From Raja brachyura (lineage: Eukaryota), in NCBI GenBank assembly GCA_963514005.1, contig OY740795.1, positions 682,001 to 746,000 of the forward strand: DNA of 64,000 nt. Direction: 5' to 3'. A program made the translations under genes and the position numbers. The notes beneath the pieces are model-generated. The model ran no database searches. It had not been told where the DNA came from and saw only the letters and a list, made by a program, of their open reading frames with translations. Shown here piece after piece: positions 2,631-50,964 of the stretch. Numbering within the stretch: the first letter of the stretch is position 1; every line of letters begins with the position of its first letter.

Positions 2631-2936
2631 ATTCCATTTCCGCGGGTTCCCAGAGCCCGCCTCAACAATCCTCTCTTTCTGGTGACGCTGTCACTCTTAA
2701 CTGCGCATATTCCGGATTCTGCTCATACACAGTACACTGGTACCGACAGTTCCCAGGGCAGGGACTGCAATTCCTGAAACAAAGACACACTTCAGGAAAG
2801 CAAGATAAGGAAGAGGCTGCCGAAGGCCGTATTACTGGTTCTCTCGATCCTGGCCAGAAAATCAGTCAGTTGACGCTATCTGTAGTACTGCCGAGCGATT
2901 AGGCTGTGTGTTGCTGGGGGATTAGTCCGCGCATCC
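2631..2936 (+). pseudogene. Leaderless supporting TCR-delta V segment pseudogene (NAR-TCR-supporting V)
   Basis: Acceptor ttttctgaag at 2630; reads SISAGSQSPPQQSSLSGDAVTLNCAYSGFCSYTVHWYRQFPGQGLQFLKQRHTSG...LPSD*AVCCWGISPRI; in-frame TAG at 2900-2902 and YYC changed to CCW; followed by an RSS. Confidence 0.9.
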
Positions 2937-2975
2937 CACAGTCACACAGCGCAGTGAGATAGCTGTACCAAATCC
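2937..2975 (+). promoter_or_regulatory. 23-RSS (degenerate) of the supporting V pseudogene
   Basis: Heptamer cacagtc, 23-bp spacer, nonamer accaaatcc. Confidence 0.85.
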
Positions 2976-3061
2976 TCCGGGACAGCACAGCAGAACAGGG
3001 AAGGAAAGAAAGAGAAAGATTACAAAGATACATTATGTTCAAACTTTCAGAAGCACAATTA

Positions 3062-3265
3062 NNNNNNNNNNNNNNNNNNNNNNNNNNNNNNNNNNNNNNN
3101 NNNNNNNNNNNNNNNNNNNNNNNNNNNNNNNNNNNNNNNNNNNNNNNNNNNNNNNNNNNNNNNNNNNNNNNNNNNNNNNNNNNNNNNNNNNNNNNNNNNN
3201 NNNNNNNNNNNNNNNNNNNNNNNNNNNNNNNNNNNNNNNNNNNNNNNNNNNNNNNNNNNNNNNNN
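3062..3265. other. Assembly gap (N run)
   Basis: Run of N. Confidence 1.
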
Positions 3266-3699
3266 GGATAATAGGCGGAAATGGAGCTGAAGTTGAAAAT
3301 CGGCCTTGGCGTAAAATATCTGAGTAGACGTCAGCGGCTAGGTAAACATCAGCCGCCGATTTTTATTCTCCCCGTTTTTCATACGCACGACCACAACACA
3401 AATACGCACAGACTAAAACTCTTTAAAAATCTCATTCATCTACTGTTGCCAATTTGTGTCAGTATACTTTACGAAGCAGCAAGAAACGTAACAGTATAAA
3501 GACTGATGGACTGCCCACTATTTATGTGCTGGTGGGGGTGCACAAGATGCAGAAGATGGGAGCTGCTCAGTTCCGCAATGGAGAAAACAAATCTCCCCCT
3601 TCCCGGAATGGAAATCGAATCCGGACCACTGGACCATGAGGGAAACTGGCTTAATTATTGTGCCTTAATGAACTTATTCTGTCCACGGAGGAGGCTCAG

Positions 3700-3950
3700 A
3701 GCAGAGTGAGGCAAATTGGCACCTCACATTTCGCTTGGGTAGTTTTCACCCCTGCGTTATGAACATTGACTACTCTAATTTCAGGCAATCCTTGCTTTCT
3801 CCCTGCATCCCCTCCCCTTCCCAGCGCCCCCATAGCCCATTGTCTCCGCCTCTTCCATTCTTCTGCCCGCCACCTCCCTCCTACATACCCACATCAGTCT
3901 GCAGAAGGGTCTCGACCCGAAACGTAACCTATTTCTTCTCTCCATAGATC
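3700..3950 (+). mobile_element. Penelope-like element 3' fragment
   Basis: HLTFRLGSFHPCVMNIDYSNF resembles a PLE ORF C-terminus, followed by ctgcagaagggtctcgacccgaaacgt; paralog at 42160-42400. Confidence 0.6.
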
Positions 3951-4059
3951 ACCAGTCGCCAGGCTCCACCCCCCCCAACTCCCCTGGACCTTCATATAGT
4001 CACCCACCCCCCCCCCCCCCCAGGACTTCCCAGAAAACTCCCAGGACTTCCCAGAAAAC

Positions 4060-4640
4060 TCTACCGTAAACCAAACCGGCCGGGTATTTGCCACTCCAGA
4101 GTCAACTCATCCAATGAAAAGTGGTCATCAAGGTGTGCAAACATCTCACTATCCACAGTCAATAGACCCTCCCACAGGATCAGCTGAGCCTTCCCGCTGA
4201 ATCCATCTGCGGAGAACAGAGACCCATAAAATGACCGAACTAAAGCACTGATCTTCTCTGGATCCGTAGAAATCATCCTCGAGCAGCTCCAGAAAGAGAA
4301 ATAAAGGCGATGCACGGTCTAGATCGTGCAGCATCTGGACCCGCGACCTCACGTAAGCATCTCGGGACCGCTCAAACTGCAGGTCCCTCCGTGCTTCCTT
4401 CCTTTCATGATACTCACAGGAGTCCTCACCAATCCGACCCAAGCGGGACTCTGCGTCGAGTAATTATCTGCTCCCCGCCTTCTGGTCGAACCCGACGTGA
4501 ACTCCTGACAAAAGGATGTAAGCATTTCTCACATCCCACCACTGCCTAAAAGAAGCCATACCCCTCCGCCTCTCTTCACTTCACCGAAAACCGACTGAAT
4601 AGCCCCTGGAATCGACTGTCCTCCAGGAGCTGATTATTAA
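4060..4640 (-). mobile_element. Tx1/L1-clade LINE ORF2 fragment (degenerate)
   Basis: AYVRSRVQMLHDLDRASPLF and TDPEKISALVRSFYGSLFS resemble the EN-RT linker of Tx1-like LINEs; paralog at 42480-43300. Confidence 0.6.
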
Positions 4641-5512
4641 AGTGCCAGCTGGTGTGCGCGCTAGGATACACTTGTTACAGTGCCGACAAGCTCGGACACT
4701 GTATTTTCACTTGTACTAGTTTTTTTTTTAAATTATTATCACATTCAGTCATATGTGTGTTTTTTTTAATTCAAGGACAATCGCAAAGAGAATCTACTAA
4801 TTGAATTTTGTAGGGTAAATAATCCCCCTATATCTATGTATGCAAGGCCCACATGTATTAAATCTATTGAAAATGCAAGACGATAACCAAAATAAGCTGG
4901 GAGGAATCTAATTTGGTAGTTGGAACGTTAGGGGTGTTAACGAACGCATTAAAAGGGTTAATATTGTAGCTTAACTGAAAGCATACAACATAGATATTGC
5001 TTTCTCACAAGAAACGCATCATAAACTTCAAGATCAAGCTAGATTGAGGACGAACTGGATAGAACAAACTTTTCACTCATCATACACGTCGAAATCTAGA
5101 GGAACGTCTATTATTATTCGCAAAGGCATTCCATTTAAACCCAAAACTACCTTAACAGATAAGGACGGGAGATATTTGATAGTTGCCGGGGAGTTCCATG
5201 CTGCCCCAATTACCTTTGTGAACATATATGCGCCCAATTTTGACAACCCGCATTTTTTCAATAAAATATTGAATATAATTGCAATATATAACTACCAGAA
5301 AGCCATAATCGGCGGAGACGTTAACTGTGTTTTAGACCCTTACTTAGATGAATCCAAACAAAAACAGAGAGTTATTACGAATTCAAAAACTAGCGAACTT
5401 CTAAATACATATATAAAACACACAAACATAACAGATATATGGAGGATTGCAAATCCGACCGGCAGGGATTACTCGTTCTGTCCAATGGTACACAAGACAT
5501 ATTCACGTATAG

Positions 5513-5602
5513 CTGAAGAAGGGTCTCGACCCGAAACGTCGCCTATCTCCTTCGCTCCTTAGATGCTGCTGCACCCGCTGATTTTCTCCAGCTTTTTGTG
5601 TA
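5513..5602 (+). mobile_element. Penelope-like terminal fragment starting at a hammerhead-like core
   Basis: 12-bp TSD attcacgtatag (5501-5512 and 5603-5614); the insert begins ctgaagaagggtctcgacccgaaacgtc. Confidence 0.7.
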
Positions 5603-5985
5603 ATTCACGTATAGATTATTTCCTGGTGGATACAAAACTAATACCCCACACTTCTAAATCAAAATTCCACACACATACGATTTCAGATCAGTCCCCAATA
5701 ACTTTTTTTCTAAAAATGGAAGGAATGATTAAGAACAAACCGTTTTGGAGGGACTATCCTCACTTTTTAATAGACCCGCAACGGAGTACATATTCAAAAC
5801 AGCAAATTGACCATTTTTCGAAATAAACGATACGCCAAACATATCACCTACACTATTATGGAAATATTTTAAAGCATACATTCGAGGCGTTATAATTTCA
5901 TACCAAGCTTTTCAAAATAAAGAAAATAAGAACGAACAAAGACAGTTAGATGAACAACTTAGACAACTGGACATAGAAAACTCTA

Positions 5986-8652
5986 AACATAGAACATAGA
6001 AATATAGAAATTAGGTGCGGGAGTAGGCCATTCGGCCCTTCGAGCATGCACCGCCATTCATCATGATCATGGCTGATCATCCAACTCAGTATCCCGTACC
6101 TGCCTTCTCTCCATACCCTCTGATCCCCTTAGACACAAGGGCCACATCTAACTCCGTATTAAATATAGCCAATGAACTGGCCTCAACTACCCTCTGTGGC
6201 AGAGAGTTCCAGAGACCCACCACTCTCTGTGTGAAAACATTCCTTTTCATCTCGGTCCAAAAGGATTTTCCCCTTATACTTAAGCTGTGACCCCTTGTCC
6301 TGGACCTCCCCAACATCGGGAACAATCTTCCTGCATCTAGCCTGTTCAACCCCTTAAGAATCTTGTAAGTTTCTATAAGGTCCCCTCTCAATCGCCTAAA
6401 TTCTAGAGAGTATAAACCGAGTCTATGCAGTCTTTGTTCATAAGACAGTCCTGATATCCCAGGAATCAGTCTGGTGAACCTTCGCTGCACTCCCTCTATG
6501 ACAATAATGTCCTTCCTCAGATTTGGAGACCAGAACTGTACGCAATACTCTAGGTGTGGCCTCACCAAGACCCTATACAACTGAAGTAGAACCTCCCTGC
6601 TCCTATACTCAAATCCTTTTGCTATGAAAGCTAACATACCATTGGCTTTCTTCACTGCCTGCTGAACCTGCATGCCTACTTTCAATGACTGGTGTACCAT
6701 GACACCCAGGTCGCGCTGCATCTCTCCTTTTCCTAATCGGCCACCATTTAGATAGTAGTCGGTTTTCCTATTTTTGCCACCAAAGTGGATAACCTCACAT
6801 TTATCCACATTATACTGCATCTGCCAAACATTTGCCCACTCACCCACCCTATCCAAGTCACCTTGCATTCTCCTAGCATCCTCCTTACAGCTAACACTGC
6901 CCCCCAGCTTAGTGTAATCCGCAAACTTGGAGATATTGCCTTCAATTCCCTCATCCAGATCATTTATGTATATTGTAAATAGCTGGGGTCCCAGCACTGA
7001 GCCTTGCGGTACCCCACTAGTAACTGCCTGCCATTGTGAAACGACCCGTTAACTCCTAATCTTTGCTTCCTGTTTGCCAGCCAGTTCTCTATCCACATCA
7101 ATACTGAACCCCCAATGCCATATGCTTTAAGTTTATATACTAATCGCTTATGTGGGACTTTATCGAAAGTCTTCTGGAAGTCCAGATACACCACATTCAC
7201 TAGTTCTCCCCATCCACGCTACTAGTTACATCCTCGAAACATTCCACAAGATTCGTCAGACATGATTTACCTTTCGTAAATCCATGCTGACTTTGTCCAA
7301 TGATTTCACCACTTTCCAAATGTGCTGTTATCACATCTTCAATAACTGACACTAGCAGTTTCCCCACTACCGATGTTAGACTAACTGGTCTGTAATTCCC
7401 CGTTTTCTCTCTCCCCCACCTTCTTAAAAAGAGGGGTTACGTTTGCTACCCGCCAATCCTCAGGAACTACTCCAGAATCTAAAGAGTTTTGAAAGATTAT
7501 CACTAATGCATCCACTATTTCTGGAGCTACTTCCTTAAGTACTCTGGGATGCAGCCTATCTGGCCCTGGAGATTTATCGGCGTTTAATCCATTCAATTTA
7601 CCCAACACCACTTCCCGACTAACCTGGATTTCAGTCAAGTACTCCTTTGACCTGCGGTCCCCTGCTATTTCCGGCAGATTATTTATGTCTTCCTTAGTGA
7701 AGACGGAACCAAAGTAGTTATTCAATTGGTCCGCCATATCCTTGTTCCCCATGATCAACTCACCTGTTTCTGACTGCAAGGGACCTACATTTGTTTTAAC
7801 TAATCTATTTCTCTTCACATATCTATAAAAACGTTTGCAGTCAGTTTTTATGTTCCCTGCCAGTTTTCTTTCATAAACTATTTTTCCTTTCCTAATCAAG
7901 CCCTTTGTCCTTCTCTGCTGGTCTCTGAATTTCTCCCAGTCCTCTGGTATGCTGCTTTTTCTGGCTACTTTGTACGCATCATCCTTTGCTTTGATACTAT
8001 CCCTGATTTCCCTTGTTATCCACGGATGCACTACCTTCCCTGATCTATTATTTTGCCAAATTGGGATGAACATTTTTTGTAGTTCATCCATGCAGTCTTT
8101 AAATGTCTTCGATTGCGTATCCACCGTCAATCCTTTTAGAATTGATTGCCAGTCAATCTTGGCCAATTCACGTCTCATACCCTCAAAGTTACCTTTCCTT
8201 AAGTTCAGAACCATTGTTTCTGAATTAACAATGTCACTCTCCATCCTAATGAAGAACTCGACCATATTATGGTCACTCTTGCCAAAGGGGGCACGCACAA
8301 TAAGACTGCTAACTAACCCTTCCTCATTACTCAATACTCAGTCTAAAATAGCCTGCTCTCTCGTTGGTTCCTCTACATGTTGATTTAGATAACTAGCCCT
8401 CATACTTTCCAAAAAATCCTCTTCCTCAGCGCCCCTGCCAATTTGATTCACCCAATCCATATGTAGTTTGAAGTCACCCATTATAACTGTTTTGCCTTTG
8501 TGGCACGCAGTTCTAATTTCCTGTTTTATACCATCCCCAACTTCACTACTACTGTTAGGTGGCCTGTACACAACTCCCACTAGCGTTTTCTGCCCCTTAG
8601 TGTTTCGCAGCTCTACCCATACCGATTCCACATACTCCAAGCTAATGTCCTT
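5986..8652 (-). mobile_element. 5'-truncated CR1 (HER1-like) LINE inserted in the old L1
   Basis: ORFs 8338-8640, 7381-8334 and 6086-6997 give APE (YRPP, GDF, SDH) and RT (QGSVLGP, FADY, LEYCVQFWSP) motifs; (ttctatgt)n 3' tail. Confidence 0.95.
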
Positions 8653-11600
8653 AAAGACCCCCTACGGCTAAACATAATAGAATAATAATACTGAAATTTA
8701 ATAAAATAAATTATTATCAGAGAAAGTCATAAGATTATTACAAATTACAAGGCAGGAACATTTTGAATTTGGGGATAAGCCCCATAAAATTCTGGCAGGT
8801 CAATTTAAAAAAAAAAACGACAAAAGGCTCACACGATTTCAAAGATTAAATCAGCCAAAGGGGAAGTATTGACCTTGCCAAGTGATATTACTAAAAGGTT
8901 TGCACAATTTTACGAGAATCTGTATACATCTAAAACGATAACGGACACCAACAAATTTACAGTTATGGGATAATTGTAACCTTCCTAAACTAGAGTTGCA
9001 GGAACAAGAGGAATTGTGGGCACAAATCTGAAATAAGGAAATAGAAGAAACAATGATCTCATTAAAAAAAATGGAAAAACACCAGGTCGCGACGGATTTA
9101 GTAATGAATTCTATAACAGTTTTAATGACATATTTACACCTCGCCTACAGAAAATGTATACTTATGCCTTCAAAGAACAAATACTACCTGAAACGGTAGC
9201 AGAATCCACGATCAAATTAATACTTAAGCATGATAAAAATGTGGAAGAACCTGGATTATATGGAGCCATTGCGTTGTTAAACACAGATCAAAAACTATTA
9301 GATAAAATACTAGCTAGAAGACTACGTAAATATGCTAGTAAATTAATACATCCGGTTCAAACAGGGTTTCGCCGTAAGAGACAATCATTTAATAATTTGA
9401 GACGTCTGTTCAATATAATGCATTCACACCAAACGGAAGATCAAAAACTATTAATCATATCGTCAGATGCAGAGAAAGCATTCCATCAGGTCGGATGGGA
9501 TTATATGGTCAGGGTATTGCAAGAATTTCAACTGGGAGAGAATTTAATTATATGGATTAAATTACTATATAATAAACCAACGGGCAGAATATTAACTAAC
9601 ATTCATTTATCTACGCAATTTCAATTGTCAATCGGTAATAGACAAGGATGTTCTCTATCACCGTTGTTATTTGCTCTCGTAATTGAACCCCTAGCGGAAA
9701 TAATTAGAACTGATCCGAATATCCATGGATATAAAACAAAATATTCCAACAATAAAATATCATTATACGCTGATGATGTACTATTGTACATCACAAAACC
9801 TCATATTACTATACCAAATATTTAAAACTTAATAGAGGACTTCCGATCATTTTCATGATATATAATAAATTGGAATAAAAGTGAAATCATGTCAATAAAA
9901 CCGAAAGACTCTACACATCATTTACAGTTTCCTTTCAAAATAGCTATGGAAATGTTTTAATACTTGGGTATCGAAATTACTAGAAGATATCAAGACATGT
10001 TTTACGCTAAATATAACCCTCTACTTAAGAAACTATGTAACTTGAATACATTTTGGAAAACGCTTCCGATGTCCTTCATATGCCGAATAAATGCCATAAA
10101 AACGATTTGTCGACCTCAAATCTTACACCTGTTCCAATCTATTCCAATATACTTATCCAAAAAGTTTTTTTAAAAACCGGACTTAGATATCACAAATTTT
10201 ATTTGGGATTATAAATCTCACAGAACACAAAGAACACATCTGAATAAACCCAAAGTAGTGGGGGGTTATGTATAACTTTATGTATTACTACTGGTCTGTA
10301 AACAGGATCCAATTGCTGGATAACTAATCCCAGCAACCGCATTTGACTATTATGGAGAGAGAGGATTGTCCCCCTTATAATATTGGAGCAATCCTTCTTT
10401 CACCAATGATGATGAATAATATAAATTACAACAAAAATCCAATTATATACAGTACAATTAGAATTTGGAAACAAATAAAACACAATTTAAGAAATCCATC
10501 TCTCGTATCTCCTATCGGTAAAAACCGTTCGTTTAAACCTTCAACTATAGATAAAGCATTTATACAGTGGGAAAGAGCCGGAATTAAAATCTTCGGAGAT
10601 TTGAATGAAATGGGCAAACTAGTATCATTTAAACAATTACAACTAAAATACAATTTGGGAAACAATCAGTATTTTAAATATTTCCAAATCTGTGACTATC
10701 TGAAAAAATACGCATAAGACGATCACAATATGCCTCCAGACTTACTGTAAGACGTAATGAATACAAAGGCAGAATCACCAAACCTACTATTATATATATA
10801 TAATATTATTCTAAGCGCAGAAATACCAACAACAGAAGGTATCAGTAGAGACTGGGAAACAGAATTAAGTATAAAAATTCCCAAACAAAGGTTGGAAGAA
10901 TATTTACTAAATGTGCATAAATGTTCAATTAATGTAAGACACCCCTTAATACAATTTAAAATCGTACACATATTATACTATTCAAAAAAAAACAAAAAAC
11001 TTTTCCCCAATGTCTCACCTATATGTGATAAATATCAATGTCAAGAAGCTAATATAGCACACTCATTTGTCTTTTGTACAAAAATTCCAAAATTTTCGAC
11101 TGAAATTTTTTTGAAATTTTCACAAAAGTATATAAAATAAAACTGACTCCAAAAGCAGATTGGATTATCTTTGGAACATCGGAAGATAGCCCTGAATTAA
11201 ATGTGTTTCAAAATACTCTATTTGAATACGGCTTAATAACTGGAAAAAAGCAAATCTTAAAATTCTGGAAAAATGCTCCTATACCAACAGTTAATATGTG
11301 GATTTCAGCTGTGTTCGAAACACTACATTTGGATGATATGAGACTCCGATTGGCAGGCAAATCAGACTGCGTCTATAAGACGTGGTCTGCTTTTATAACT
11401 CTATTACAAGGATAAGGTGCAAATATACCTCAACAAAGTATGGTGAAGGGGGAAGAAAAACTGTCGAGTTGGTAGACTCCTTTTGCGAGATGTTTATAAT
11501 AACGTAACTGGCTTTTCTTTTTTCCTTCTCTTTCTTTCCTTTTTTTCTCCTCTTCAGGGTCTATCTTTTAATCTACTTTCTCTAACTCTTCGTTCAAGGG

Positions 11601-12202
11601 TTCCCTTTCCCTCTGCCACGCATTTTCACGTTCACAACTCTTTTTCACTCTTCTGCTTTCTCTGTTGATATTTCTTTCTCTTTTCCTTATTTTCTATTCC
11701 TTATTTTCTCATTGTACCCCTTAAAAAGTTAAGGGGTACAATGACTGTAATACTATATATGGGATGTACACTGATGTAACTTACGGTACCTCTAATAAAT
11801 AAAGATACATACAATATATTTTCACCTATATTTAGCTGGCAAGAAGCTTCCAAATTTGTTTCACGAAAGATCAGCAAGTTTTAAAAATCCCACATAGTAA
11901 GGCTTTGTGTGGTTGATCGGGAGAATCATCAATATATTTATGGGACATGCAATATACTTTCAATGGGGACAACAGCGGTGAAGGTAAGAGTTTACCAACG
12001 GAATTCAAGTTATTTCACTTCCGGTGGCGCCATGTTCTAGGGGAGAACAGCGCCAGATCAGCTCCGTAAAAATCGGTTAAAAAAACGGGGTTAAAGGAGG
12101 GTGCTAACGCTACTTACCGCAGGAGATCGATTTAAAACGGCTCCGGTGCGATTGAAGGCTGCGTGACGTCATCAGGCGCGCGACTTCGGTAAGAAATTTA
12201 AA

Positions 12203-13345
12203 ATGCAACCCTCCTCCCCTCCCCTGAAGAAAACGGGCCTTAGAAGAGAGGCTGGTGCCACCAAAGCCTCGGGCTCGAGTCTGACTGCCTCCCAAGAAGA
12301 AATCTCACAGAGGAAAGTGGAAATGGAAGAATTTAAAAATTCCTTGATGGGTGAGATGAAAAAACTGGTGAAAGAAATAAAAGACCTGAAGAAGAAATAT
12401 AAAGATGAATTTAAAGACATGAAGAAAGAATATAAGGATGAAATAAAAACTCTTAAAGCGGAGATTCTGGTGTCTCATGAGAAAACTAAAGTGGAATTAA
12501 CAAAAGAAGTTACCGAGATGGTAAAGAATATAATGAACGAATGGAAAAGAAAGGCGGATGCTGAATTTCAAAACCGAATCTCTGAGGTAAACGACAAGGT
12601 TGCTGGGCTGGAACAAATGCTGAATGATAAGATAGATCCTATTGTCATCACACTCGACCAACAAAATGACGCAATTAAAGATTTGGCTGATTTTGCTGTA
12701 AAAAGTGCCAAGGAAACTGAGAAGTTACTTGCCGAGAATAAACGCCTTTCAGAACTACTCCACAAAATAAATGAGAAATGTATTGATTTGGAAGGTCGAC
12801 AAAGACGTAAGAATTTGCGAATAGTAGGATTGCCCGAGGGTCGGGAAGGAAATCAGGACCCGCGGAAATTTGCTGCAAAACTCCTAAAGGACATTCTGGA
12901 TCTGGACCAAGAACCACTGTTGGGCCGTGCCCACAGGGCTTTAAGACGGGCCCCTGGGAGTGGTGCACCACCAAGACAAATGATTATAAAGGTGGCTTAT
13001 GATCACGAGTTTGAAGAAATGATGAAGATAATAATAAGAAAGAGGAATCTGAAATATGAAGGAGTTAATATCAGTATCTTCAGAGATTACCCGGCTGAAG
13101 TGGCTAAGAGAAGATCTTTATTCTCAGAAACAAGAGGTATTCTTCGGAATATAAAGGATGGAAAGGATCTCAGATATGGTTTGATGTACCCAGCAACATT
13201 GAGGGTGACCTACGACAACAAGGAATTCCGTTTTGTTAAGCATACCAAAGCACTGGAATTCGACCGAGGCATACAGAAGAAGGCAGAAGAGGAAGCAGAA
13301 GAAGAAGTAAGCGCTGAAGAAGAAGAAGAAGAAGAAGAAGAATGA
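12203..13345 (+). CDS. L1 ORF1p (coiled coil, RRM, CTD; acidic tail)
   Basis: 380-aa open ORF with LEGRQRRKNLRIVGLPEG, RAHR, FRDYPAEVAKRR and YPATLRV motifs typical of L1 ORF1. Confidence 0.9.
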   Translation: MQPSSPPLKKTGLRREAGATKASGSSLTASQEEISQRKVEMEEFKNSLMGEMKKLVKEIKDLKKKYKDEFKDMKKEYKDEIKTLKAEILVSHEKTKVELTKEVTEMVKNIMNEWKRKADAEFQNRISEVNDKVAGLEQMLNDKIDPIVITLDQQNDAIKDLADFAVKSAKETEKLLAENKRLSELLHKINEKCIDLEGRQRRKNLRIVGLPEGREGNQDPRKFAAKLLKDILDLDQEPLLGRAHRALRRAPGSGAPPRQMIIKVAYDHEFEEMMKIIIRKRNLKYEGVNISIFRDYPAEVAKRRSLFSETRGILRNIKDGKDLRYGLMYPATLRVTYDNKEFRFVKHTKALEFDRGIQKKAEEEAEEEVSAEEEEEEEEE

Positions 13346-40469: not shown

Positions 40470-42120
40470 CACTCTTACCCCTTATGCAATTATGTTGAAA
40501 AGTGGCCCTTTTTGATTTTTGCCCTGGATTTTTCTGCCTGCCACTTTAACTTTTCTCCCTGCTACCTATTGCTTCTACCCTCATCTCACATCCCTCTGTC
40601 TCTCTGCTCATGTTCCCACCCCCTGCCACATTAGTTTAAATCCTCCCTGACAGCACTAGCAAACACTCCCCCAAAGACATTGGTTTCCTTCAATCCCAGG
40701 TGCAGACCGTCCTGTTTGTACTGGTCCCATCTCCCCCAGAACTGATTCCAATGTCCGAGAAAATTTAATCCCCTCCCCCTTGCACCATTTTTCATGCCAC
40801 ACGTATTCATCAGCAATATCCTCCTAATTCTGCTCTGACTAGCACGTGGCACCGGTAGGAGTTCAGAGATTATTACCTTTGAGGTCATACATTTAAGTTT
40901 ATCTCTTAGCTCGCAAAATTCGCTTGCAGGACCTCATCCCGTTTTTTACCTGTATCGTTGGTGCCAATGTGCACCACGGCAGCTGGCTGTTCACCCTCCC
41001 CCTCCAGAATGTTCTGCAGCCGTTCAGTGACATCCTTGACCCTTGCATCAGGGAGGCAACATGCCATTCTGGAGTCTCGTTAGCGGCCGCAGAAACACCA
41101 ATCTATTCCCCTTACTATTGAATTCCTTAGTACAATAGCCCGTCCACTCTTCTTTCTCCCCTCCTGTGCCGCAGAGCCACCCATGGTGCCATGAACTTGG
41201 CTGCTGCTGCCTTCCCCTGATGAGCCATCTCCCCCAACTGTATCCAAAATGGTATATCTGTTTAGGAGGGAGATGACCGCAGGGGACTCCTGCACCACCT
41301 GCCTACTGCTACGCTGGCTAATGGCCACCCGTTCCCTTTCTGGCCGCTTACCTTGCGATGTGACCAACTCACTGCACGTGCTTTTCACGAGCTTCTCAGC
41401 ACCGTGCATGCTCCAGTATGAATCCAACCGCAGCTCCAATCGTTCAATGCGGCCTGCCAGGAGCAGCAGCAGGACACACTTGCGGCAAATGTAGTCACTA
41501 AGGACACCGACAATATCCCTGATCTCCCACATGTTGCAGGATGATCAAACCACGGGGCCGATCTCAAATGAGATGGCTTGCCCCCAAATTAAATCACATC
41601 ACACTATAAAAATCTTAATCCTTTAAACTAACTTTTACTAAAAAGCACTGAACCCTTTAGCTTACTGAACCATTCAGCTCACTGAACCCTTTAGCTCACT
41701 GTACCTTTAACTCACTTTACCTTTAACTCACTGAACCCTTTAACTCACTTTACCTTTAAGTCACTTTACCTTTAACTCACTTTACCTTTAAATCACTGAA
41801 CCCTTTAGCTCACTTTACCTTTAACCCACTTTATCTTTAATGTAAACCAGGGGTCGCACCCAATCAGCTGTTTCCGCCAATCAGCGGCTTCCACCAGAAC
41901 ACTTGTGTGGAACGTTACAGATTTGAGTTCCCCCTCCGCTTGCTCCAACGGCTCCAGGGCCTCTGTTAAAACAAAGCCCCGCCCTCGATTTTTAATCTCG
42001 CCACCCGGAGACTCCTCCTCTTGCTCCAACGTCTCCTCGGCCTCTGTTAAAACAAAGCCCCGCGCTCGATTTTTAAACTCACCACCCGGAGACTCCTCTA
42101 CTTGCTCCAACGTCTCATGG
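40470..42120 (-). mobile_element. 5' part of a CR1 LINE (5'UTR tandem repeats and ORF1 zinc-finger/SGNH esterase)
   Basis: MWEIRD..YICRKC, NSIVRGID..FCG and FWGRWDQYKQDGLHL; ~16-bp repeats at 41650-41840 and two ~81-bp repeats at 41940-42115. Confidence 0.8.
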
Positions 42121-42159
42121 GCCTCTGGCCGTGAAGGAGGCTCAGAACATAGCGAGGCC

Positions 42160-43300
42160 CACCGCAAATTGGCACCTCATATTTCGTTTGGGTAGTTTAC
42201 AACGCAGCGGTATGAACATTGACGTCTCCAATTTCAGACAGTCCTTGCTTTCTCCCTCCATCCCCTCCCCTTCAAGGCTCCCCATAGCCCACTGTCCCCG
42301 CCTGTTCCATTTTTCTTCCAGTCCCCCCACCCCACCCCACATCAGTCTGCAGAAGCGCCTCGTCCCGAAACGTCACCTATTCCTTCTCTCCATAGATCAC
42401 CGGTCGCCAGGCTCCACCCCCTCCCCCACTCCCCAGGACCTTCATGTACTCACCCCCAAGACATCCCAGAAAGCTCTACCGTCTACCAAACCGGCTGGAG
42501 ATTTGCCACTCCACAGTCAACTCCGCCAATGAAAAGTGGTCATCAAGGATTTCAAACAGCTCACTATCCACAGTTAGTAGACCATCCCGCAGGAGCAGCT
42601 GAGCCTTCCCGCTGTAACCAAGTGGGGGGGAACAGAGACCTATAAAATGACCGAACTAAAGCACTGATCTTCTCTGGATCTTTAACAGAGGAGCCGTCAT
42701 CCGCGAGCAGCTCGACGAGATGTTCGCGGATTCCCAGCCCTTCATCCAGAGAGAAAAATAAAGGTGATGCATGGTCCGGATCGTGCAGCATCAGGACCCG
42801 CGACCTCACGTAAGCATCTCTGGGCAGCTCAAGCTGCAGGTCTCTCCGTGCTTCCTTCCTGTCATGATACTCTCCCCACTCACAGGAGTCCTCACCAATC
42901 CGACACAAACGAGACTCTGCGTCGAGTAATTCTCTGCGCCCCGCCCTCTGGTTGAACCCGTCGTAAACTCCTGATAAAAGGATGTAAGCCTTTCCCACAT
43001 CCCACCACTGCCTAATGGAAGGGATACCACTCCGCCTCTCTCTTCACTTCACCCAAAACCGACTGAATGATACCTGGAATCGGCTATTCTCCAGCAGCTG
43101 GTTATTAAAGCGCCAGAACGCGGAGCAGCTGATGTGCGCGCTAGGATAAAGTACACTCACATCAGACAGTGGACCGAGCGCGGCACCGGCCGCACAGAGG
43201 CCACGAGACACGAGAGACATAAGCTCCGGAGATGTATATGCCATCGATACGGGAACCACCCCCTTCAGACATGCGCGAAAAAACGTTGGAATCAGGGTGT
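42160..43300. mobile_element. Penelope-like 3' fragment (+, 42160-42400) and Tx1-like ORF2 fragment (-, 42480-43300)
   Basis: HLIFRLGSLQRSGMNIDVSNF; AYVRSRVLMLHDPDHASPLFFSL and FWRFNNQLLENSRF. Confidence 0.6.
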
Positions 43301-44499
43301 AGCTGAAATAAAAATATAAAGATTCGTACAATCAATTTTCACCTTCATTTAGCTGGAAAGAAACTTCAAAAATTCGTTTCACGAGAGATCAGCAAGTTTT
43401 AAAAATCCCACATTAAGGCTTTGTAGAGTTGATCGGGAGAATCATCAATATATATATATGGGACAAGCAATATACATTCAAAGGGGAGAACATCGGAGAA
43501 GGTAAGACTTTACCAACTGAATTGAAGGCATTTGCACTATGCAGGCTGCTACATTCAAAGAAACACACTCGTAGGAAAATAGACAATTGTCTTCGTTGCG
43601 ATTGTGCCAACTAAATGGCGAGAAATATGGTTCACAATTTTCCCCATCGCTTAGAATAATTCCGCTCAGATTTACATTTCACGGAATCCACGACTAAACA
43701 TGTCCCGCTGAAGGGATGCTGCATGATAATATTAGCAGAGTTGACATATGGACAGCTGGAGGAGTGCGTTATCACTTAATTTATTAACAATTGGTTTGTT
43801 AAGAAGAGTGCCCGAGCGATGATTTTTTTTAGAACCAGATAGCTTCATTTTAATTCATCATTGACAGAATATTTTATTTTCTTCACAGATTGCGAGGGAA
43901 GAGGAGAAATGGGTAGGTACAAAGTTAACCCTCCACGTTGTAGTATCAGGGAAACATTATGCGGCTTACTGCCTCTTAACAGCAAATTAACAGAAGGCAG
44001 TATCTCTGGAGGAAAGGGATAGATGACGTTTCTGGTCAGGATCATTCTTCCACCGACAGTAGGACGAGGCCACTGGATGCAATAGTAGGCCAGAACAAGG
44101 CAGGGAAGGCAACACATGTCTGAGAAGGAAATTAGCCCATAATCGCCCATTGTTGGCTGGAGAATACGTGGTAACAAACAACTACAAAGATGGGAGCGGA
44201 ACAACTAGCATGATGACTAGGTTGGGGAGAGATTGGGAGAAAATTAGACATGCGAGATACGAGACGGTGTTCCTCCATTGATTGCGTGGCCTCGCTCTAA
44301 AAGTTGAGGTGGACAACGGCAGAAGGGGTTATATGGGAATGGGAAGACGTGTTAAAATGTTTGCCCTCCGGAAGAACGTAAAGGCAAATGTGGATATTGA
44401 TTTGTTACCGCAGATAGGACCACAGAATCACAGTCATAGAGTGATACAGTGTGGTAGCAGGACATTCCGCCCAACTCGCCACACCGGCCAACAATATAT

Positions 44500-47400
44500 C
44501 AGTTACACTAGTATGGAAGGGGACCGATATAACAAGAGGGGGACCGACCTTCTGGCAGGCAGGTTTGCTAGGGCTACACGTGTGGGTATAAACTAAATAG
44601 TGGGGGCAGGAATTGACAAATCGGGAGTATAAAGATGGAGTTGAGGGGGAAGTAGCTACAGGAAAAATACAAACGCTTCTCGATTTAACGGGAAGGAAAG
44701 CTCGAGAATGGTCAAAAGGGTAAGGTCAGGGACAATTGCGAGTGCTGCGAGGGGGGAAGGAAATATGGAGGTGAAAGTGCTGTATATGAATATAAGGAAT
44801 AAAGTGGACGAGCTTGAGGCACAGTTAGAAACTGGCAAGTGTGATGTTGTGGGAACTACTGAGACATGGCTGCAAGAGGGCAAAGGTTGGGAACTGAATA
44901 TTCAAGGGAGAAGACAGACAGGTGGGTAGAGGGGATGGGGTTGTCCTGTTGGTGAGGAATGAAATTCAGTCCCTTGCAAGGGGTGACATTGAAACACGAG
45001 ATGTGGAGTCAGTATGGATGGAACTATGGAATTGAAAGGGTAAGAAGACCCTAAAGGGACTAATCTACAGGCCCCAAACAGTAGCCTGGACATAGGGCGC
45101 AAGTTGAATCAGGAGTTAAAATTGGCAAGTAGTAAACGTACTTCTGTGGTTGTTATCGGAGATTTCAACATGCAGATGGACTGGGAAAATCAGGTTGGTA
45201 CTGGAGCCCAAGAAACGGACTTTGTAGAGTGCCTTCGTAATGGATTATTTGAACAGCTTGTATTGGAGCCTACAAGAGAGAAGGCAATTCTGGATTTAGT
45301 GTTATGTAATGAACCGGATTTTATAAAGGACCTCGAGGTTAATGAGCCATTAGGAGGCAGTGACCATAACATGGTCAGGTTTACTCCACAATTGGAGAGG
45401 GAGAAGGGTAGATCGGAGGTGTCGGTGTTACAGTGGAATAAATGGGACTAAGGGGCCATGAGCGATGAGCTGGCCAGTGTTGACTGGAAATATACACTAG
45501 CAGGGACAAAAATGGTAGGTTGTTCTAGGAATAATACAGAAGGTGCAGGATCATTTCATTCCTAGGAGGAAGAAAGATTCCAAGGGGAGAAAATTACGTC
45601 CATGGCTTAGAAGGGACGTTAGTGACATTATAAAAATTAAAGCGAAGTACATCGTATCAAAGATGAGCGGGTAGCAAGTAGATTGGGTAATGTTTAAGGA
45701 ACAACAGAAGATAACTAAAAATACAATACCGGGAGGAAATATGAAGTACGAAGATAAGCTAGCCAAGAATATAAAGCAGGATATTAAAAGCGTGTTTAGG
45801 TATGTGAAGAGGAAGAAAATAGTTATGACCAAAGTTGGACCCTTGAAGACCGAAACAGGTGAATTTATTATGGAGAACATGGAAATGGCAGATGATTTGA
45901 ACAGTTACTTTGGATATGTCTTCACTAAGGAGGACACAAACAATCTTCCTGATATAGTAGTGGCCAGAGGATCTGGGGTGACGGAGGAACTGAAGGAAAT
46001 CCACATTATGCAGGAAATGGTGTTGGATAGACATATGGGACTGAAGGCTGTAAATACCCAAGCCTGATGGTCTGCATCAGAAGGGTACTTCAGGACGTGG
46101 CTCCAGAAATTATGGATGCATTGGTGATATTTTTCCAATGTTCTATAGCCTCAGGATCAGTCCCTGTGGATTGGAGGGTAGCTAATGATATCCTACTTTT
46201 AAGAAAGGTGGGAGAGAGAAAACAGGGGATTACAGACCAGCTAGCCTGACATAGGTGGTGGTGAAGATGCTGGAGACAATTATAAAACATGAAATAGCGG
46301 AAAATTTGGATAGTAGTAACAGGATCGGTCCGAATCGGCATGCGTTTACGAAGGGGAAATCATGCTTGACTAATCTTCTGGAATTTTTTGAAGATTTAAC
46401 TAGGAAAATGGACAAGGGAGAGCCAGTGGATGTAGTGTACCTGGAATTTCAGAAAACATTTCATCAGGTCCCATATAGGAAATTAGTGGGCAAAATTTGG
46501 GCGCATGGTATTGGGGGTAGAGTGCTGACATGGATAAAGAAGTGGTTGGCAGACAGGAAACAACGAGTAGGGATTAACCGGTCCCTTTCAGAATTGCAGG
46601 CAGTGACTAGTGGGGTAGCGCAAGGCTCGGTGCTGGGACAGCAGCTATTTTCAATATACATGAATGATTTGGATGAAGGGATTCAAAGTAACATCAGCAA
46701 ATTTGCAGATGACACGAAGCTGGGTGGCAGTGTGAACTATGAGGAGGGTGCTATAAGAATGCAGGGTGACTTGCACAGGTTGGGGGAGTGGGCAGATGCG
46801 GATAAATGTGAGGTTATCCAGCTTGGCAGCAAAAACAGGAAGGCAGATTACTGTCTAAATGGTGTCAATTTGGGAAAAGCGGAAATACAACGGGATCTGT
46901 GGGTCCTTGTGCATCAGTCTATGAAAGTAAGCATGCAGGTAAAGCAGGCAGTGAAGAAAGCGAATGGCATGCTGGCCTGTATAACTAGTGGAATCTAATA
47001 TAAGAACAAAGACGTCCTTCCGCAGTTGTGCAGAGCCCTAGTGAGACCACACCTGGAGTATTGTGTGCAGTTTTGGTCCCCTAATTTGAGGAAGGACATT
47101 CTTGCTATTGAGGGAGTGCAGCGTAGGTTTACAAGGTTAATTCCCGGGATGGCGAAACTGTCATATGCTGAAAGAATGGAGGAGCTGGGCTTGTACGCTC
47201 TGGGGTTTAGAAGGATGAGAGGGGATCTCATTGAAAGAGATAAGATTGTCAAGGGCTTGGACACGCTAGAGGCAGGAAACATGTTGCCGATGTTTGGCGA
47301 AACTAGAACCAGGGGCCACATTTTAAGAATAAGGAGTAAGCCGTTTCGAACGGAGAAGAGAAAACACTTTTACTCACAGAGAGTGGCGAGTCTGTGGAAT

Positions 47401-47615
47401 TTTCTTCCTCAGAGGGCGATGGAGGCGGATTCTCTGGATGCTGACAAGAGAGAACTGGAGACGTCTCTTAAAAATAGTGGAGTCAGGGGATATGGGGAGA
47501 AGGCGGGAACGAGGCACTGATTGGGGATGATCAGCCATGGTCACAATGAATGGCGGTGCTGGCTCGAAGGGCCGAATGGCCTACTCCTGCAGCTATTCTC
47601 TATTGTCTATTGTCC
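44500..47615 (+). mobile_element. Degenerate CR1 LINE ORF2 with 3' tail
   Basis: GDFN, GSDHNMV, FADD and HLEYCVQFWSP; tail (tattgtc)n. Confidence 0.9.
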
Positions 47616-48375
47616 ATATTCCAGTCCCACTTGCCTGCACTTGGTCCATATCCCTTCAAATCTCTCCTATTCTATCTAACTGTTTCTTAAACGATGGGAT
47701 AGTCCCAGCCTCGACTACCTCCTGTCGCAGCTTGTTCCATACACCCACTACCCTTTGTGTGGAAATGTTTCCCCACGGATTGCTATTGAATATCTTTCCT
47801 TTCTCCTTGAACCTATGTCCTCTGGTAGTCGATTCGCTGGGCAAAAGACTCTGTGCATCTACCCGGTGTACTCCTCTCATGATTTTGTATTTCTGGCACA
47901 CCTCACCCGTAGCTTTACTTTCGATAGATGTTTTCCGCATAGGGAAGGTATTTTAAGCACGGTATCAGTATGGAACTTTACACAATCTAGATCATCCGCT
48001 GTTGAAACAGCAGATTCTCTTTAAGCCGTAAACCTCGTTAATGTGCAACGATACGTGTTTTCAATGATGAAAGGAAATCATAAATACAACCTGTTGTACC
48101 TATTCAACAAAAAATCTTCACTCGTTTTGAAAACATGTATGTTCCAGGCATATGTATACATATTCAAGAAAGCACAGAAGTTGAATGATTGAACGGGGCA
48201 CATGATGATACGGACAAGAGGTGAGACTCAATTGAGCCCAGTAACCTACTAAGCAGGTGGGCGTGCCCGACAGTGCGAATGGACATAAAATGTCCACACA
48301 TTAAATGCTGTTTTTTCACACAAACGCTACAGCAAAGCAACGTATGGAGCTAGCTGATCACTCGTTTTTGTTATA

Positions 48376-50964
48376 TTATTTGAACTTACACTTTACCGAT
48401 ATAAATATCTTTCCAGTGCAAATGACCGGATAAGTTAGCAGACGGGACAGCTCCTCTCTGAACTTGCTCTGTGTCACAGTGTAAATCGCAGTATTGGTGC
48501 AGGAGCTCAGCAGCTGAAGCATCAATCCAACCCTTTCCAATCCACCCAAATAGTCTGTCCAGGTCTTGCGCATAAACACTTTCAAACTTCGATACGCTAT
48601 AAAATGTGCCACACTTGTGGCCCAGAGCAGGATGAAGCAGCTCGATATTGCCAGAAGTAAAACGACCGACCGTCTGCGGTTCACCATCTCCTGGTCTTTC
48701 TTTTTCTCGCCACCGCGGAGATTCCTGCGGGTTCGACTGGCCACGAAAATACGTCTGACGGTGAGCGTGTTAAACAACAAAATCAGGCAGAATGGAATCA
48801 CCGGGGTGAACAACTGTTCGGTCCATGAGAATACCATCCATTCGAGACGAATGAAAAAATCGACAAGTTTGCGGCAGCCATGCGGTCTACCCCATCCGTT
48901 ATACGGAACGTAGGCGAAGGGCAAGGGTATGTTTTCGAGGCAGACGAATGGGATCACTGTCAGGATAACAATTGACGCGGTTCTCTCGGTGCAATATTTA
49001 GTTTTCATGGTCTGAGTAGAGATCGCAACAAAGCGATCAAAGGTGAAAGCGACTGTGAACCATACAGAGCAATTCACCATGACGGATGCCAGGAAGATCG
49101 TTATTTTGCACACAGGAGTGTAGGGCAAGGAAGCATGCCACCAATACAGCTCAGCAATCCGTTGAAATATCACCTCACAGAGAATCACAGAGAGGTCCGC
49201 GGTCGCCATGGCTACCATGTAACGAGTGATGCACTTGGAAAGGCCGCACTTGCTACGTGACAGGATCACAATCGCCATCAGATTCACTAGGAAAGAATGA
49301 AAACATAAAATGTTTAATTGTGTGATGTCCGCGTTGGTGGGAGGGAGCAGACGGAATAATTTCGCCAGTAGTAGAGATTATTTATTTTACGAATCAATAT
49401 TTGGGACAATCACCCGTCAAACGTTTGCCAGAAAGATGTTCATTCAGTAGATTATTCAATTCGTGATTTCCAAAATTAGTAGGATTGTCTTATGTATAAA
49501 ATAATGACATAAAGATGGAAATATCAGTACAAAGACAATCCAATTTTGCTATTCAGGAACTTAATCTGCAAATGATTAAAATCATGTTTACCAAAATGAG
49601 TGGGATTGCCTTTTGTACTAATCGTCACGACGTTATATCAATCGTTTGATGTTGATGTAAAATATAGAACATTTTCAACAGGACGGACATTGTACCTCAA
49701 AAAAGAAATCAACAATCCAAATTACGGTCGATCAAATCAGCATTAAGAGGGGATCCTCCCAATATCAAATATTTGATTTCATTTTTATAACGGTAAATGT
49801 AAATGCGCAGCGTTATTTTTACTGCTGAGACGTGAGCAACGTTTGCGTCGGGGCATTGAATCAATCGAGGTCTGGATTAACGCGCTCTGTTTTGCATTGG
49901 GCCTTCGAGAATGCATTTCCGAACATGAGACCAAGGAAAGGATTTCAGTGCAGCGCTGCAAATATAATTACAAACACCCTTCACAAGCACGGCTAACAAC
50001 ATAACGGGCAGGTATTTTCTGCCGAACAGCGGCGCAAACAATGTCTCATGAGGACATATGCGAAGTATCAGCTTGAGCCCCTTCTTCAGACTCCGGTCGG
50101 AAGAATGATCCCAACTCGATACGTCCACTGCGTCGGAAATACTGCAAGACTGGCTGAGTTAACCAGATCTCTGTTGTCACTGCACGATCGCTGCTCTTGT
50201 AGTTTATAATATCTACCGATCGTTTTATTTTTTGTCCAGCAGGTTGTTCGTACGACCTTCAAATCTGTCTCCGGAAACTATCCCTATGAGAATTTAAGAG
50301 CGATACAGAAAGTGCAGTATCAAATGACTGGACGGGGTGTATTGAGCGTTGTGCCCAATGCAGTACTCACATTGGGACATAAACTGCCACTCACAGCGAG
50401 GACGAAGTTTCGCTTCACCTCGCAACAGCGCAAGTAATGGCATTGACTTTAGTAAAAAGCTGCGAGGGCTATATTTCTGCGAACTTCAATGAGCGGTTTC
50501 GATCATATATACCAACGCGCTACCTCGCGCCCAAGGTGTACATCGCTTACTTTATTTAAGTTTAGGGATATAGCGCGAAAACGGGAGCATCGACGTATCA
50601 AATCTGCACCGATCACGCACACCAAACAACAGCCTACACACACAAGGGGCAATTCATTTTACTTTTATGGAGCATGGGAGCAAATCGAAGATCTCGGGGA
50701 AAACCCAAAAAGATACGGGGAGAACGTACAGACTCCGTACAGACAAACGCTTTAAAACAATTGCTCAAGCGCTGCGCCAGCGTACCGCCCTAACCCGTGC
50801 TGGGCGACTCGGTATGTTCTCTTAATCTTTAATATTCTGCGCTTTTCAAAAGTCTTTGTTAGTTCCATGCGATGTGCCGACAATTACATACCAGGTATAC
50901 CGATTGCTGCCAAAATCGGATAATACACAAGTCCTATTTGTTCCTCAATCGGAATGCCGTGCAT
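48376..50964 (-). CDS. GPR139-like (GPR139/GPR142 family) class A GPCR, 2 exons: 50892-50964 and 48376-49286, 327 aa
   Basis: Exon 1 MHGIPIEEQIGLVYYPILAAIGIP + g|gtatgt; acceptor ttctttcctag; exon 2 VNLMAIVILSRSKCGLSKCITRYMVAMATADL, WFTVAFTFDRFVAI, KYCTERTA and LLSSCTNTAIYTVTQSKFREEL; seven hydrophobic segments, no stops. Confidence 0.9.

What the first reader, a model, noticed from the sequence alone, without database searches (positions are those of the whole stretch)
2631..50964. GPR139-like GPCR genes are part of the tandemly duplicated NAR-TCR unit and interleave with V segments on the opposite strand
Seen: the order is supporting V (psi) > GPCR (psi, -) > NAR V-D-J > supporting V > GPCR (intact, -), with collinear flanks showing that the GPCR was duplicated together with the receptor segments. 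Established: non-immune genes sit inside antigen-receptor loci in mammals (trypsinogens in TRB, olfactory receptors at the TRA/TRD V end). Inference: a GPR139-like passenger or partner gene expands with NAR-TCR cassettes and would be somatically deleted onto an excision circle when an upstream V rearranges to downstream D-delta. GPCR copy number or expression could therefore depend on cassette usage. I know of no description of this linkage.
Basis: partly seen in the sequence, partly recalled or inferred. Interest (0 to 1): 0.8.

Follow-up and report, generated by a model that had tools for sequence, protein, structure and literature searches.

The report
Receptor genes co-duplicated with TCR cassettes
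In a skate T-cell-receptor gene region, a block holding one receptor V gene and one unrelated orphan GPCR gene was duplicated as a unit, so GPCR genes now sit between V genes; the layout is real, but it looks like hitch-hiking and not a working partnership.

Summary
Window self-comparison shows a collinear duplication, unit A 908-25137 and unit B 37862-51154, at 85-91% identity. Each unit carries a leaderless supporting V on the + strand and a two-exon, 7TM GPCR on the - strand. One NAR L-V-D-J module (31486-32813) lies between the units.

- **Unit A:** both genes are dead.
- **Unit B GPCR:** the gene (327 aa, GT-AG intron) is intact and keeps 76 of 76 family-conserved positions.
- **Unit B V:** the window shows a 1-bp frameshift, but four public runs carry the missing A, so it is probably intact.

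The haplotype mis-join idea fails. The stretch dead GPCR > NAR V-D-J > V lies on gap-free sequence, and the units are too diverged to be alleles.

The GPCR belongs to a very large cartilaginous-fish family that is only distantly GPR139-related and is spread over many contigs per species. No RNA run holds it. The best reading is a passenger gene amplified by segmental duplication, like trypsinogen genes in mammalian TRB. Somatic excision is a sound inference but untested, and a functional link is unsupported.

The window shows duplication of V+GPCR only, not of the NAR module. The scan had already followed up the same interleaving elsewhere on this genome (s1-880909, s1-880915).

The parts
908..25137 (+). 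Duplication unit A (supporting V + GPCR, both dead), inflated by unit-specific LINE insertions
   Evidence: Collinear blastn blocks to 37862-51154 at 85-89% identity. LINE endonuclease and RT ORFs at 12203-17745 and 5044-9825 are absent from unit B.
2631..2936 (+). Leaderless supporting V, pseudogene (unit A)
   Evidence: Pfam V-set 8.7e-08. Acceptor AG lies just before 2631. TAG at 2900-2902, YYC changed to VCCW, heptamer CACAGTC and nonamer ACCAAATCC degraded.
3062..3265 (.). N gap A, not read across
   Evidence: It starts 18 bp after the last block homologous to unit B.
22119..22917 (-). GPCR pseudogene exon 2 (unit A)
   Evidence: tblastn gives three pieces in different frames. Acceptor AG changed to TG, 121-bp deletion over TM2-TM3 including the DRF motif, 1-bp deletion.
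24875..24947 (-). GPCR pseudogene exon 1 (unit A); still open, with a GT donor
   Evidence: 87.5% identical to exon 1 of unit B.
31486..31528 (+). NAR leader exon
   Evidence: ATG...MGILLFFVLSLCLR followed by GTGAGT.
31681..31974 (+). NAR-type V exon, open
   Evidence: Pfam V-set 1.2e-09. The best single-domain PDB matches are shark VNAR domains, 1e-15 to 1e-12.
31975..32012 (+). NAR V RSS (CACAGCG, 22-bp spacer, ACAAAAACC)
32364..32378 (+). Candidate NAR D segment with 3' RSS CACAGTG-12-ATAAAAACT at 32379; the 5' RSS is weak
32756..32813 (+). NAR J (..YYQEGTGTRVTVTA) preceded by heptamer CACTGTG and followed by splice donor GTAAGT
37862..51154 (+). Duplication unit B (supporting V + intact GPCR)
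39741..40045 (+). Leaderless supporting V (unit B). Frameshifted in the window's letters, in frame in public reads.
   Evidence: Pfam V-set on both pieces. 1-bp deletion relative to unit A after 39877/39878. All four runs insert an A behind 39878, which gives 0 stops over 39650-40045.
40046..40084 (+). Supporting V RSS (CACAGTG, 23-bp spacer, ACCAAAACC)
40233..40469 (.). N gap B, not read across
   Evidence: It starts 8 bp after the last block homologous to unit A.
48376..49286 (-). Intact GPCR exon 2 (303 codons plus stop), after acceptor AG at 49287-49288
   Evidence: Pfam 7tm_1 1.5e-17, 64.4 bits, spanning profile positions 2-260 of 260. 78-81% identical to skate 'probable GPR139' proteins. 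Matches 76 of 76 family-conserved columns.
50892..50964 (-). Intact GPCR exon 1 (MHGIPIEEQIGLVYYPILAAIGIP plus 1 nt), donor GTATGT
   Evidence: Its end ..YYPILAAIGIP followed by VNLMAIV of exon 2 matches the N-terminus of P0001.

Best explanation
This is a stretch of a skate TCR alpha/delta-type V region that holds NAR-TCR cassettes. An ancestral block of roughly 10-13 kb, made of a leaderless supporting V-delta on the + strand and a two-exon orphan class-A GPCR gene on the - strand, was copied once by segmental duplication, probably unequal crossing-over.

The two copies then diverged by about 12-15% in non-coding DNA and picked up different LINE insertions. They followed a birth-and-death course: in unit A both the V and the GPCR decayed, while in unit B both stayed usable.

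The GPCR is a hitch-hiking member of a very large cartilaginous-fish-specific receptor family, distantly GPR139-related, that multiplies by local duplication all over these genomes. It is most likely a working gene with a job outside T cells. Nothing links its function to the receptor cassettes.

Because it lies downstream of V segments whose RSS point the same way, it would be cut out on an excision circle in T cells that use an upstream V. Trypsinogen genes in mammalian TRB behave the same way, with no expected consequence for the tissues that actually use the gene.

**Shown:** the duplication, the gene structures, the state of each copy, the conservation of the intact copy, and the dispersed family.

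**Inferred:** the duplication mechanism, a non-T-cell function, and somatic excision.
For: - **One duplication event.** Thirteen ordered collinear blocks join the units, most with E=0. The V exon is 91.8% and GPCR exon 2 is 92.0% identical between units, so they have the same age; the GPCR intron is 84.4% identical.
- **Not retrocopies.** Both GPCR copies keep the same intron, exon 1 and donor.
- **Unit A is dead.** V: stop codon, lost Cys, degraded RSS. GPCR: lost acceptor, 121-bp and 1-bp deletions.
- **Unit B GPCR is intact.** It has GT-AG splice sites, 327 codons, and 76 of 76 columns that are at least 90% conserved in 25 relatives.
- **Past constraint on both copies.** Between copies dN is 0.068, dS is 0.149 and omega is 0.45. 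The total dN is below what a pseudogene branch alone would give, so both copies were constrained for some time after duplication.
- **Unit B V is intact in reads.** All four runs restore its frame.
- **Large, dispersed family.** There are 2195 hits, and all 120 listed come from sharks, rays, skates or chimaera. They lie on more than 15 different contig lengths in Heptranchias perlo and in Heterodontus francisci, and on two chromosomes in Amblyraja radiata.
- **Old subfamily.** The tree places the window gene in a skate clade (100/100), inside a batoid clade (98/99), with sharks outside.
- **Not an assembly artefact.** The stretch dead GPCR > NAR V-D-J > supporting V lies on gap-free sequence, 3266-40232.
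Against: - No RNA evidence exists either way. No listed run that holds the gene is on record as RNA, so expression, tissue and splicing are unconfirmed.
- The two V-to-GPCR adjacencies each cross an N gap. They rest on the same order appearing twice.
A conserved, selected linkage therefore cannot be excluded.
- The scan's notes report the same V+GPCR pairing in many neighbouring windows. Such regularity would also fit a functional unit.
Confidence: 0.75

Rival explanations
1. Functional partnership. The GPCR is expressed in developing or mature T cells, and its dosage or expression is tied to which cassette rearranges. Somatic deletion of GPCR copies would then be a regulated outcome.
For: - The intact GPCR is fully conserved at family-invariant positions.
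- The V+GPCR unit is kept together in the duplication.
- By unverified scan notes, the pairing recurs in neighbouring windows.
Against: - The family is dispersed over many contigs per species, so TCR linkage is not a family property.
- One of the two copies here is dead.
- No RNA holder was found.
- A gene that is excised by the rearrangement cannot serve the cell afterwards.
- The trypsinogen-in-TRB precedent shows that such embedding needs no function.
Confidence: 0.06
2. Regulatory by-stander role. The GPCR promoter, or antisense transcription from it running back toward the supporting V, helps open chromatin for the neighbouring cassette. Selection would then keep the pair together irrespective of the receptor protein.
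For: The GPCR is on the opposite strand, downstream of the V, and is transcribed toward it. The homology block ends only about 190 bp upstream of the GPCR start codon in both units.
Against: - There is no transcription data at all.
- No CTCF-like site lies within either unit. The window has one match, at 55148, which is no more than chance.
- Protein-level conservation of the intact copy (76/76, omega 0.45) points to selection on the receptor itself.
Confidence: 0.07
3. Assembly artefact. The two units are alleles or collapsed copies wrongly joined across the N gaps, so there is no real tandem duplication.
For: Each V-to-GPCR adjacency crosses an N gap (3062-3265, 40233-40469), and both gaps start at the same paralogous point. 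The window also carries at least one 1-bp error or allele in the unit B V.
Against: - The units differ by 9-15% and by several kb of unit-specific LINE insertions, far beyond allelic difference.
- Unit A's GPCR and unit B's V lie on one gap-free stretch, with the NAR module between them (3266-40232).
- The same order on both sides of both gaps would need two identical mis-joins.
- Public contigs at 99% identity match unit B specifically.
Confidence: 0.03
4. Both GPCR copies are non-functional. The open unit B copy is simply a younger, not yet disrupted, unexpressed relic.
For: No RNA holder was found. Relative to unit A and to relatives, it has a 9-bp in-frame deletion in the third intracellular loop. 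Its tip branch is longer (0.20) than those of its nearest relatives (0.11-0.13).
Against: A 327-codon frame with intact GT-AG sites survives next to a sister copy that has a lost splice acceptor and two frame-breaking deletions at the same age. It keeps 76 of 76 conserved columns, as good as or better than every annotated relative tested. Omega is 0.45.
Confidence: 0.09

Closest known systems
Trypsinogen genes embedded in the mammalian TRB locus (established knowledge, not tested here)
   Same: An unrelated, tandemly multiplied gene family lies between rearranging V segments and the downstream D-J-C. It is therefore removed from T-cell DNA by deletional V(D)J joining, with no known role in T cells.
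   Different: Here the embedded gene is a GPCR on the opposite strand, and it is duplicated in the same block as a V segment. The locus is a skate TCR V array with NAR-TCR cassettes. Excision and tissue of expression are not shown.
Olfactory receptor genes at the V end of the mammalian TRA/TRD locus (established knowledge)
   Same: Class-A GPCR genes of a large, tandemly expanding family sit next to TRA/TRD V genes.
   Different: The mammalian OR genes flank the array. Here the GPCRs are interleaved with V segments and co-duplicated with them. The family is not an OR family, and no chemosensory role has been shown.
NAR-TCR doubly rearranging cassette (Criscitiello, Saltis and Flajnik 2006, PMC1458790, cited in PMC12227049)
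   Same: A leader plus NAR-type V with its own D and J. The J ends in a splice donor and is followed by a leaderless supporting V with a splice acceptor and a 23-bp RSS.
   Different: That description, as far as the held library shows, does not mention GPCR genes between cassettes. In this window only the supporting V, not the NAR module, is seen duplicated.
Human GPR139 (PDB 7VUG and 9M42)
   Same: It is the best solved-structure match to a profile of the family, at 3e-18 over nearly the full length, against 4.5e-12 for the next receptor. Like the skate gene, it is a rhodopsin-family 7TM protein.
   Different: The single sequence matches it only at about 1e-7, no better than 5-HT2A. The skate gene belongs to a cartilaginous-fish expansion with thousands of members and is not an ortholog. 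Ligand-binding residues were not examined.

Membership tests
Rhodopsin-family (class A) GPCR | Pfam 7tm_1 match above the curated cut-off, covering the whole 7TM core | tested here: met
   64.4 bits against a cut-off of 30.5, profile positions 2-260 of 260.
Rhodopsin-family (class A) GPCR | E/DRY-type motif at the end of TM3 and NPxxY-type motif in TM7 | tested here: inconclusive
   DRF (TFDRFVAIS) is present. TM7 reads NTAIY, which lacks the Pro, but this variant is invariant across all 26 aligned family members.
GPR139/GPR142 subfamily | Clearly closer to GPR139 than to other class-A receptors | tested here: inconclusive
   The family profile gives GPR139 3e-18 against TRH receptor 4.5e-12. 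The single sequence gives GPR139 about 2e-07 against 5-HT2A 1e-07 to 5e-07. It is the nearest known relative, but distant.
GPR139/GPR142 subfamily | One-to-one orthology with vertebrate GPR139 | tested here: not met
   2195 hits form a cartilaginous-fish expansion with many paralogs per species. The window gene nests in a skate-specific clade.
GPR139/GPR142 subfamily | Conserved aromatic-amino-acid binding pocket residues | not tested
   No residue-level comparison with the GPR139 pocket was made.
NAR-TCR cassette | NAR-type V exon with its own split leader | tested here: met
   Leader 31486-31528 and V exon 31681-31974. VNAR domains are the best single-domain PDB hits, 1e-15 to 1e-12.
NAR-TCR cassette | Own D and J segments with RSS, and a J that ends in a splice donor | tested here: met
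   V RSS with a 22-bp spacer. D with a canonical 3' RSS (12-bp spacer) but a weak 5' RSS. J reads EGTGTRVTV and is followed by GTAAGT.
NAR-TCR cassette | Downstream leaderless supporting V with a splice acceptor and its own RSS | tested here: met
   Acceptor CAG before 39741 and RSS at 40046-40084. The frame is open once the read-supported A is counted.
NAR-TCR cassette | Expressed as a two-V-domain TCR delta chain | not testable with these tools
   No RNA run was available.
Passenger genes inside antigen-receptor loci (trypsinogen-in-TRB type) | An unrelated gene lying between rearranging gene segments | tested here: met
   The dead GPCR lies between a supporting V and the NAR V-D-J. Its link to the NAR module and to the second V is on gap-free sequence, 3266-40232.
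Passenger genes inside antigen-receptor loci (trypsinogen-in-TRB type) | Removed from lymphocyte DNA by deletional rearrangement | not testable with these tools
   The RSS orientation fits, but the D-J-C region is outside the window and no T-cell DNA was available.
Passenger genes inside antigen-receptor loci (trypsinogen-in-TRB type) | Function and expression unrelated to lymphocytes | not testable with these tools
   No RNA holder. The only indirect support is that the family is dispersed over many contigs.

The most novel reading that the evidence does not exclude
The V+GPCR pairing is an old, selected arrangement of elasmobranch TCR alpha/delta loci. The GPCR, or transcription from its promoter back toward the V, would be active in thymocytes before rearrangement. 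It would influence which NAR-TCR or V-delta cassette becomes accessible, and progressive excision of GPCR copies would mark or tune the cell's later state.
Probability: 0.05. Interest if true: 0.8.

Novelty: new member of a known kind. Interest (0 to 1): 0.35.

Why it matters
Antigen-receptor loci are among the fastest-changing parts of vertebrate genomes. Genes caught inside them, such as trypsinogens in TRB, are the classic example of genes that are lost somatically in one cell lineage.

This window shows that in a skate an orphan GPCR family has been caught in the V array that carries NAR-TCR cassettes, and that it is amplified block-wise with V segments. The held literature does not mention this.

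The finding matters in three ways:
- as a caution for annotating these loci;
- as a natural marker for dating cassette duplications;
- as a pointer to a very large, unstudied cartilaginous-fish receptor family.

It would matter much more if the linkage proved conserved and functional, which nothing here shows.

Tried and rejected
- **First RSS and V-motif regex scan.** It found nothing because the patterns were too strict. A plain heptamer scan located the segments.
- **NAR V position.** I first placed the NAR V end at the 31553 heptamer. That site lies in the leader intron. Re-translation from 31440, prompted by scan note s1-880920, gave the true V exon.
- **Cross-species synteny.** The word search with the 95-aa supporting V gave no hits, probably because of the length filter.
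- **Expression.** The look-up of sequencing runs listed no RNA holder. I therefore used the one read-laying run to test the V frameshift.
- **Supporting V against PDB.** It hits generic antibody and TCR V domains and cannot type the segment as delta.
- **CTCF-like motif scan.** One match, outside the units, at chance level.
- **Haplotype mis-join.** Rejected on divergence and on gap-free linkage.
- **Retroposition of the GPCR.** Rejected because the intron is shared.
- **Steps deliberately left out.** I did not search the joined two-exon GPCR model; the exons were handled apart. I did not read across or fill the N gaps.
Full report
**What is in the window.** The window has two N runs, 3062-3265 and 40233-40469. 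A blastn of the window against itself gives 13 ordered, same-strand blocks that join 908-25137 (unit A) to 37862-51154 (unit B). Most blocks are 85-89% identical and most have E=0. Unit A is longer because it carries LINE insertions that unit B lacks. Their ORFs match endonuclease and reverse-transcriptase families.

**V segments.** A heptamer scan and translations locate one NAR module:
- leader 31486-31528 with a GTGAGT donor;
- V exon 31681-31974, which is open, matches Pfam V-set at 1.2e-09, and has shark VNAR domains as its best single-domain PDB matches at 1e-15 to 1e-12;
- RSS CACAGCG-22-ACAAAAACC;
- a short D at about 32364-32378 with a canonical 3' RSS;
- J at 32756-32813 (..EGTGTRVTVTA), followed by GTAAGT.

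Leaderless supporting V exons start right after a splice acceptor at 2631 (unit A) and 39741 (unit B).
- The A copy has an in-frame TAG (2900-2902), has lost the YYC cysteine and has a degraded RSS.
- The B copy has a perfect RSS (40046-40084) but, in the window's letters, a 1-bp deletion in FR2 that shifts the frame.

Contigs of four public runs (three samples, two studies) all carry an extra A behind 39878, at full depth in three runs and about half depth in the fourth. With that A, the frame is open from the acceptor to the RSS. The frameshift is therefore an assembly error or an allele of the reference, and the B supporting V is probably usable.

**GPCR genes.** The minus-strand ORF 48376-49287 matches Pfam 7tm_1 over the whole profile, at 64.4 bits. 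It lacks a start codon of its own. Skate homologues begin ..YYPILAVIGIPVNLMAIV, and a six-frame motif search finds MHGIPIEEQIGLVYYPILAAIGIP at 50892-50964, followed by GTATGT. Exon 2 follows a TTTCCTAG acceptor.

The unit A copy keeps an open exon 1 and its donor. Its acceptor is TG, a 121-bp deletion removes TM2-TM3, and a further 1-bp deletion follows. tblastn finds no other GPCR or V copies in the window.

**Is the intact copy under selection?**
- Between units, GPCR exon 2 is 92.0% identical, the V exon 91.8% and the GPCR intron 84.4%.
- Nei-Gojobori over 259 codons gives dS 0.149, dN 0.068 and omega 0.45. The total dN is less than a freely drifting A branch alone would contribute, so both copies were constrained for a while after duplication.
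- The B copy matches 76 of 76 columns that are at least 90% conserved among 25 relatives, as good as or better than every annotated relative.
- It does carry a 9-bp in-frame deletion in the third intracellular loop.

**What family is it?** The word search returns 2195 hits. All 120 listed hits come from sharks, rays, skates or a chimaera, and most are named 'probable GPR139' by NCBI. The best are 78-81% identical, from Amblyraja radiata and Leucoraja erinacea. The contig-length column shows the family on many different contigs per species: more than 15 in Heptranchias perlo and in Heterodontus francisci, and two chromosomes in A. radiata.

A tree of 26 members places the window gene in a skate clade of five (100/100) with two subtypes. 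That clade sits inside a batoid clade (98/99), with shark sequences outside.

Against solved structures, the single sequence is no closer to GPR139 than to 5-HT2A, at about 1e-7. A family profile singles out GPR139, at 3e-18 against 4.5e-12. 'GPR139-related orphan class-A GPCR' is a fair label. 'GPR139 ortholog' is not.

**The gaps and the mis-join idea.** Both gaps begin 8-18 bp after the last block shared by the two units, at the same paralogous point just 3' of the supporting-V RSS. The other unit therefore cannot bridge either gap, and I did not try to read across them.

The stretch 3266-40232 is gap-free. It holds unit A's flank, the dead GPCR, the NAR V-D-J and unit B's supporting V, so parts of both units are physically linked. 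The same kinds of sequence lie on both sides of both gaps, which would need two identical mis-joins. Divergence of 9-15%, plus kilobases of unit-specific LINEs, rules out alleles.

**What the window does not show.** Only [supporting V + GPCR] is duplicated here. Homology starts at 908 and 37862, and the NAR module occurs once. Scan notes from the overlapping window say unit A lost its NAR part (s1-881112), which I could not check.

**Function.** The look-up of sequencing runs listed six holders in two studies, none on record as RNA, so expression is unknown. No CTCF-like site lies in the units.

The V RSS sit at the 3' ends on the + strand and the GPCRs lie downstream. But the D-J-C region is outside the window. 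The inference also cuts against a T-cell role, because a gene removed by rearrangement cannot serve the mature cell.

**Literature.**
- No paper in the held library combines GPR139 with any cartilaginous-fish term in a relevant way.
- The 2025 paper on the elasmobranch antigen-receptor cluster does not mention GPCRs.
- The catshark sensory-genome paper does not mention this family.
- One likely source on shark TCR loci, PMC7909615, is not held.

**Earlier scan notes.** The same interleaving has been noted in many windows of this genome. It was followed up twice, in s1-880909 and s1-880915, with the same conclusion: real, apparently undescribed, probably a by-product. I treat these as leads. 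My own tests agree with them.

**Verdict.** It is a new member of a known kind, namely unrelated genes trapped in antigen-receptor loci. Interest is moderate to low.

- The large representative search and the third word search were not used.

Noticed in passing
window 39877-39879: The reference letters lack one A that all four public runs carry (GGATT in the window, GGAATT in the reads). This turns an open supporting V into an apparent pseudogene. Other fixed differences from the runs lie at 39816 (G>T) and 39907 (C>A).
   Followed up: yes
window 3062-3265 and 40233-40469: Both N runs begin at the same paralogous position, 8-18 bp after the last shared block just 3' of the supporting-V RSS. 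This suggests a shared sequence there that is hard to assemble or was masked. I did not read across them.
   Followed up: partly
window 39460-39523: A roughly 60-bp piece upstream of the supporting V has a summed contig word depth above 100,000 in every run, against tens elsewhere. It is a very high-copy repeat, possibly SINE-like.
   Followed up: no
window 12203-17745: A LINE with four long open ORFs (a 380-aa coiled-coil ORF1-like protein, endonuclease, RT and a C-terminal part) is inserted in unit A only. It postdates the duplication and may be recently active.
   Followed up: partly
window 34605-37473: A LINE on the minus strand, with 489-aa endonuclease and 427-aa RT ORFs, sits inside the long intron between the NAR J and the supporting V of unit B. 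The two-V transcript must therefore splice across it.
   Followed up: no
window 41646-41840 and 41933-42127: Tandem repeats (16-bp unit about 11 times; 81-bp unit about 2.4 times) lie in unit B-specific sequence after gap B. An unclassified 150-aa ORF lies at 41080-41532 (-), with no Pfam match.
   Followed up: no
window 48716 (unit B) against 22460-22470 (unit A): The intact GPCR lacks 9 bp (three residues, RDL/RDI-S in relatives) in the third intracellular loop. The dead copy and all close relatives keep them.
   Followed up: partly
window 24027-24312 and 25264-25547: A 286-bp direct repeat (91% identical) flanks exon 1 of the dead GPCR and the end of unit A. It may mark the duplication boundary or a later local duplication.
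   Followed up: no
window 32330-32378: The candidate NAR D has a canonical 3' RSS but only a weak 5' heptamer and nonamer. Scan notes on neighbouring cassettes report missing D segments.
   Followed up: no
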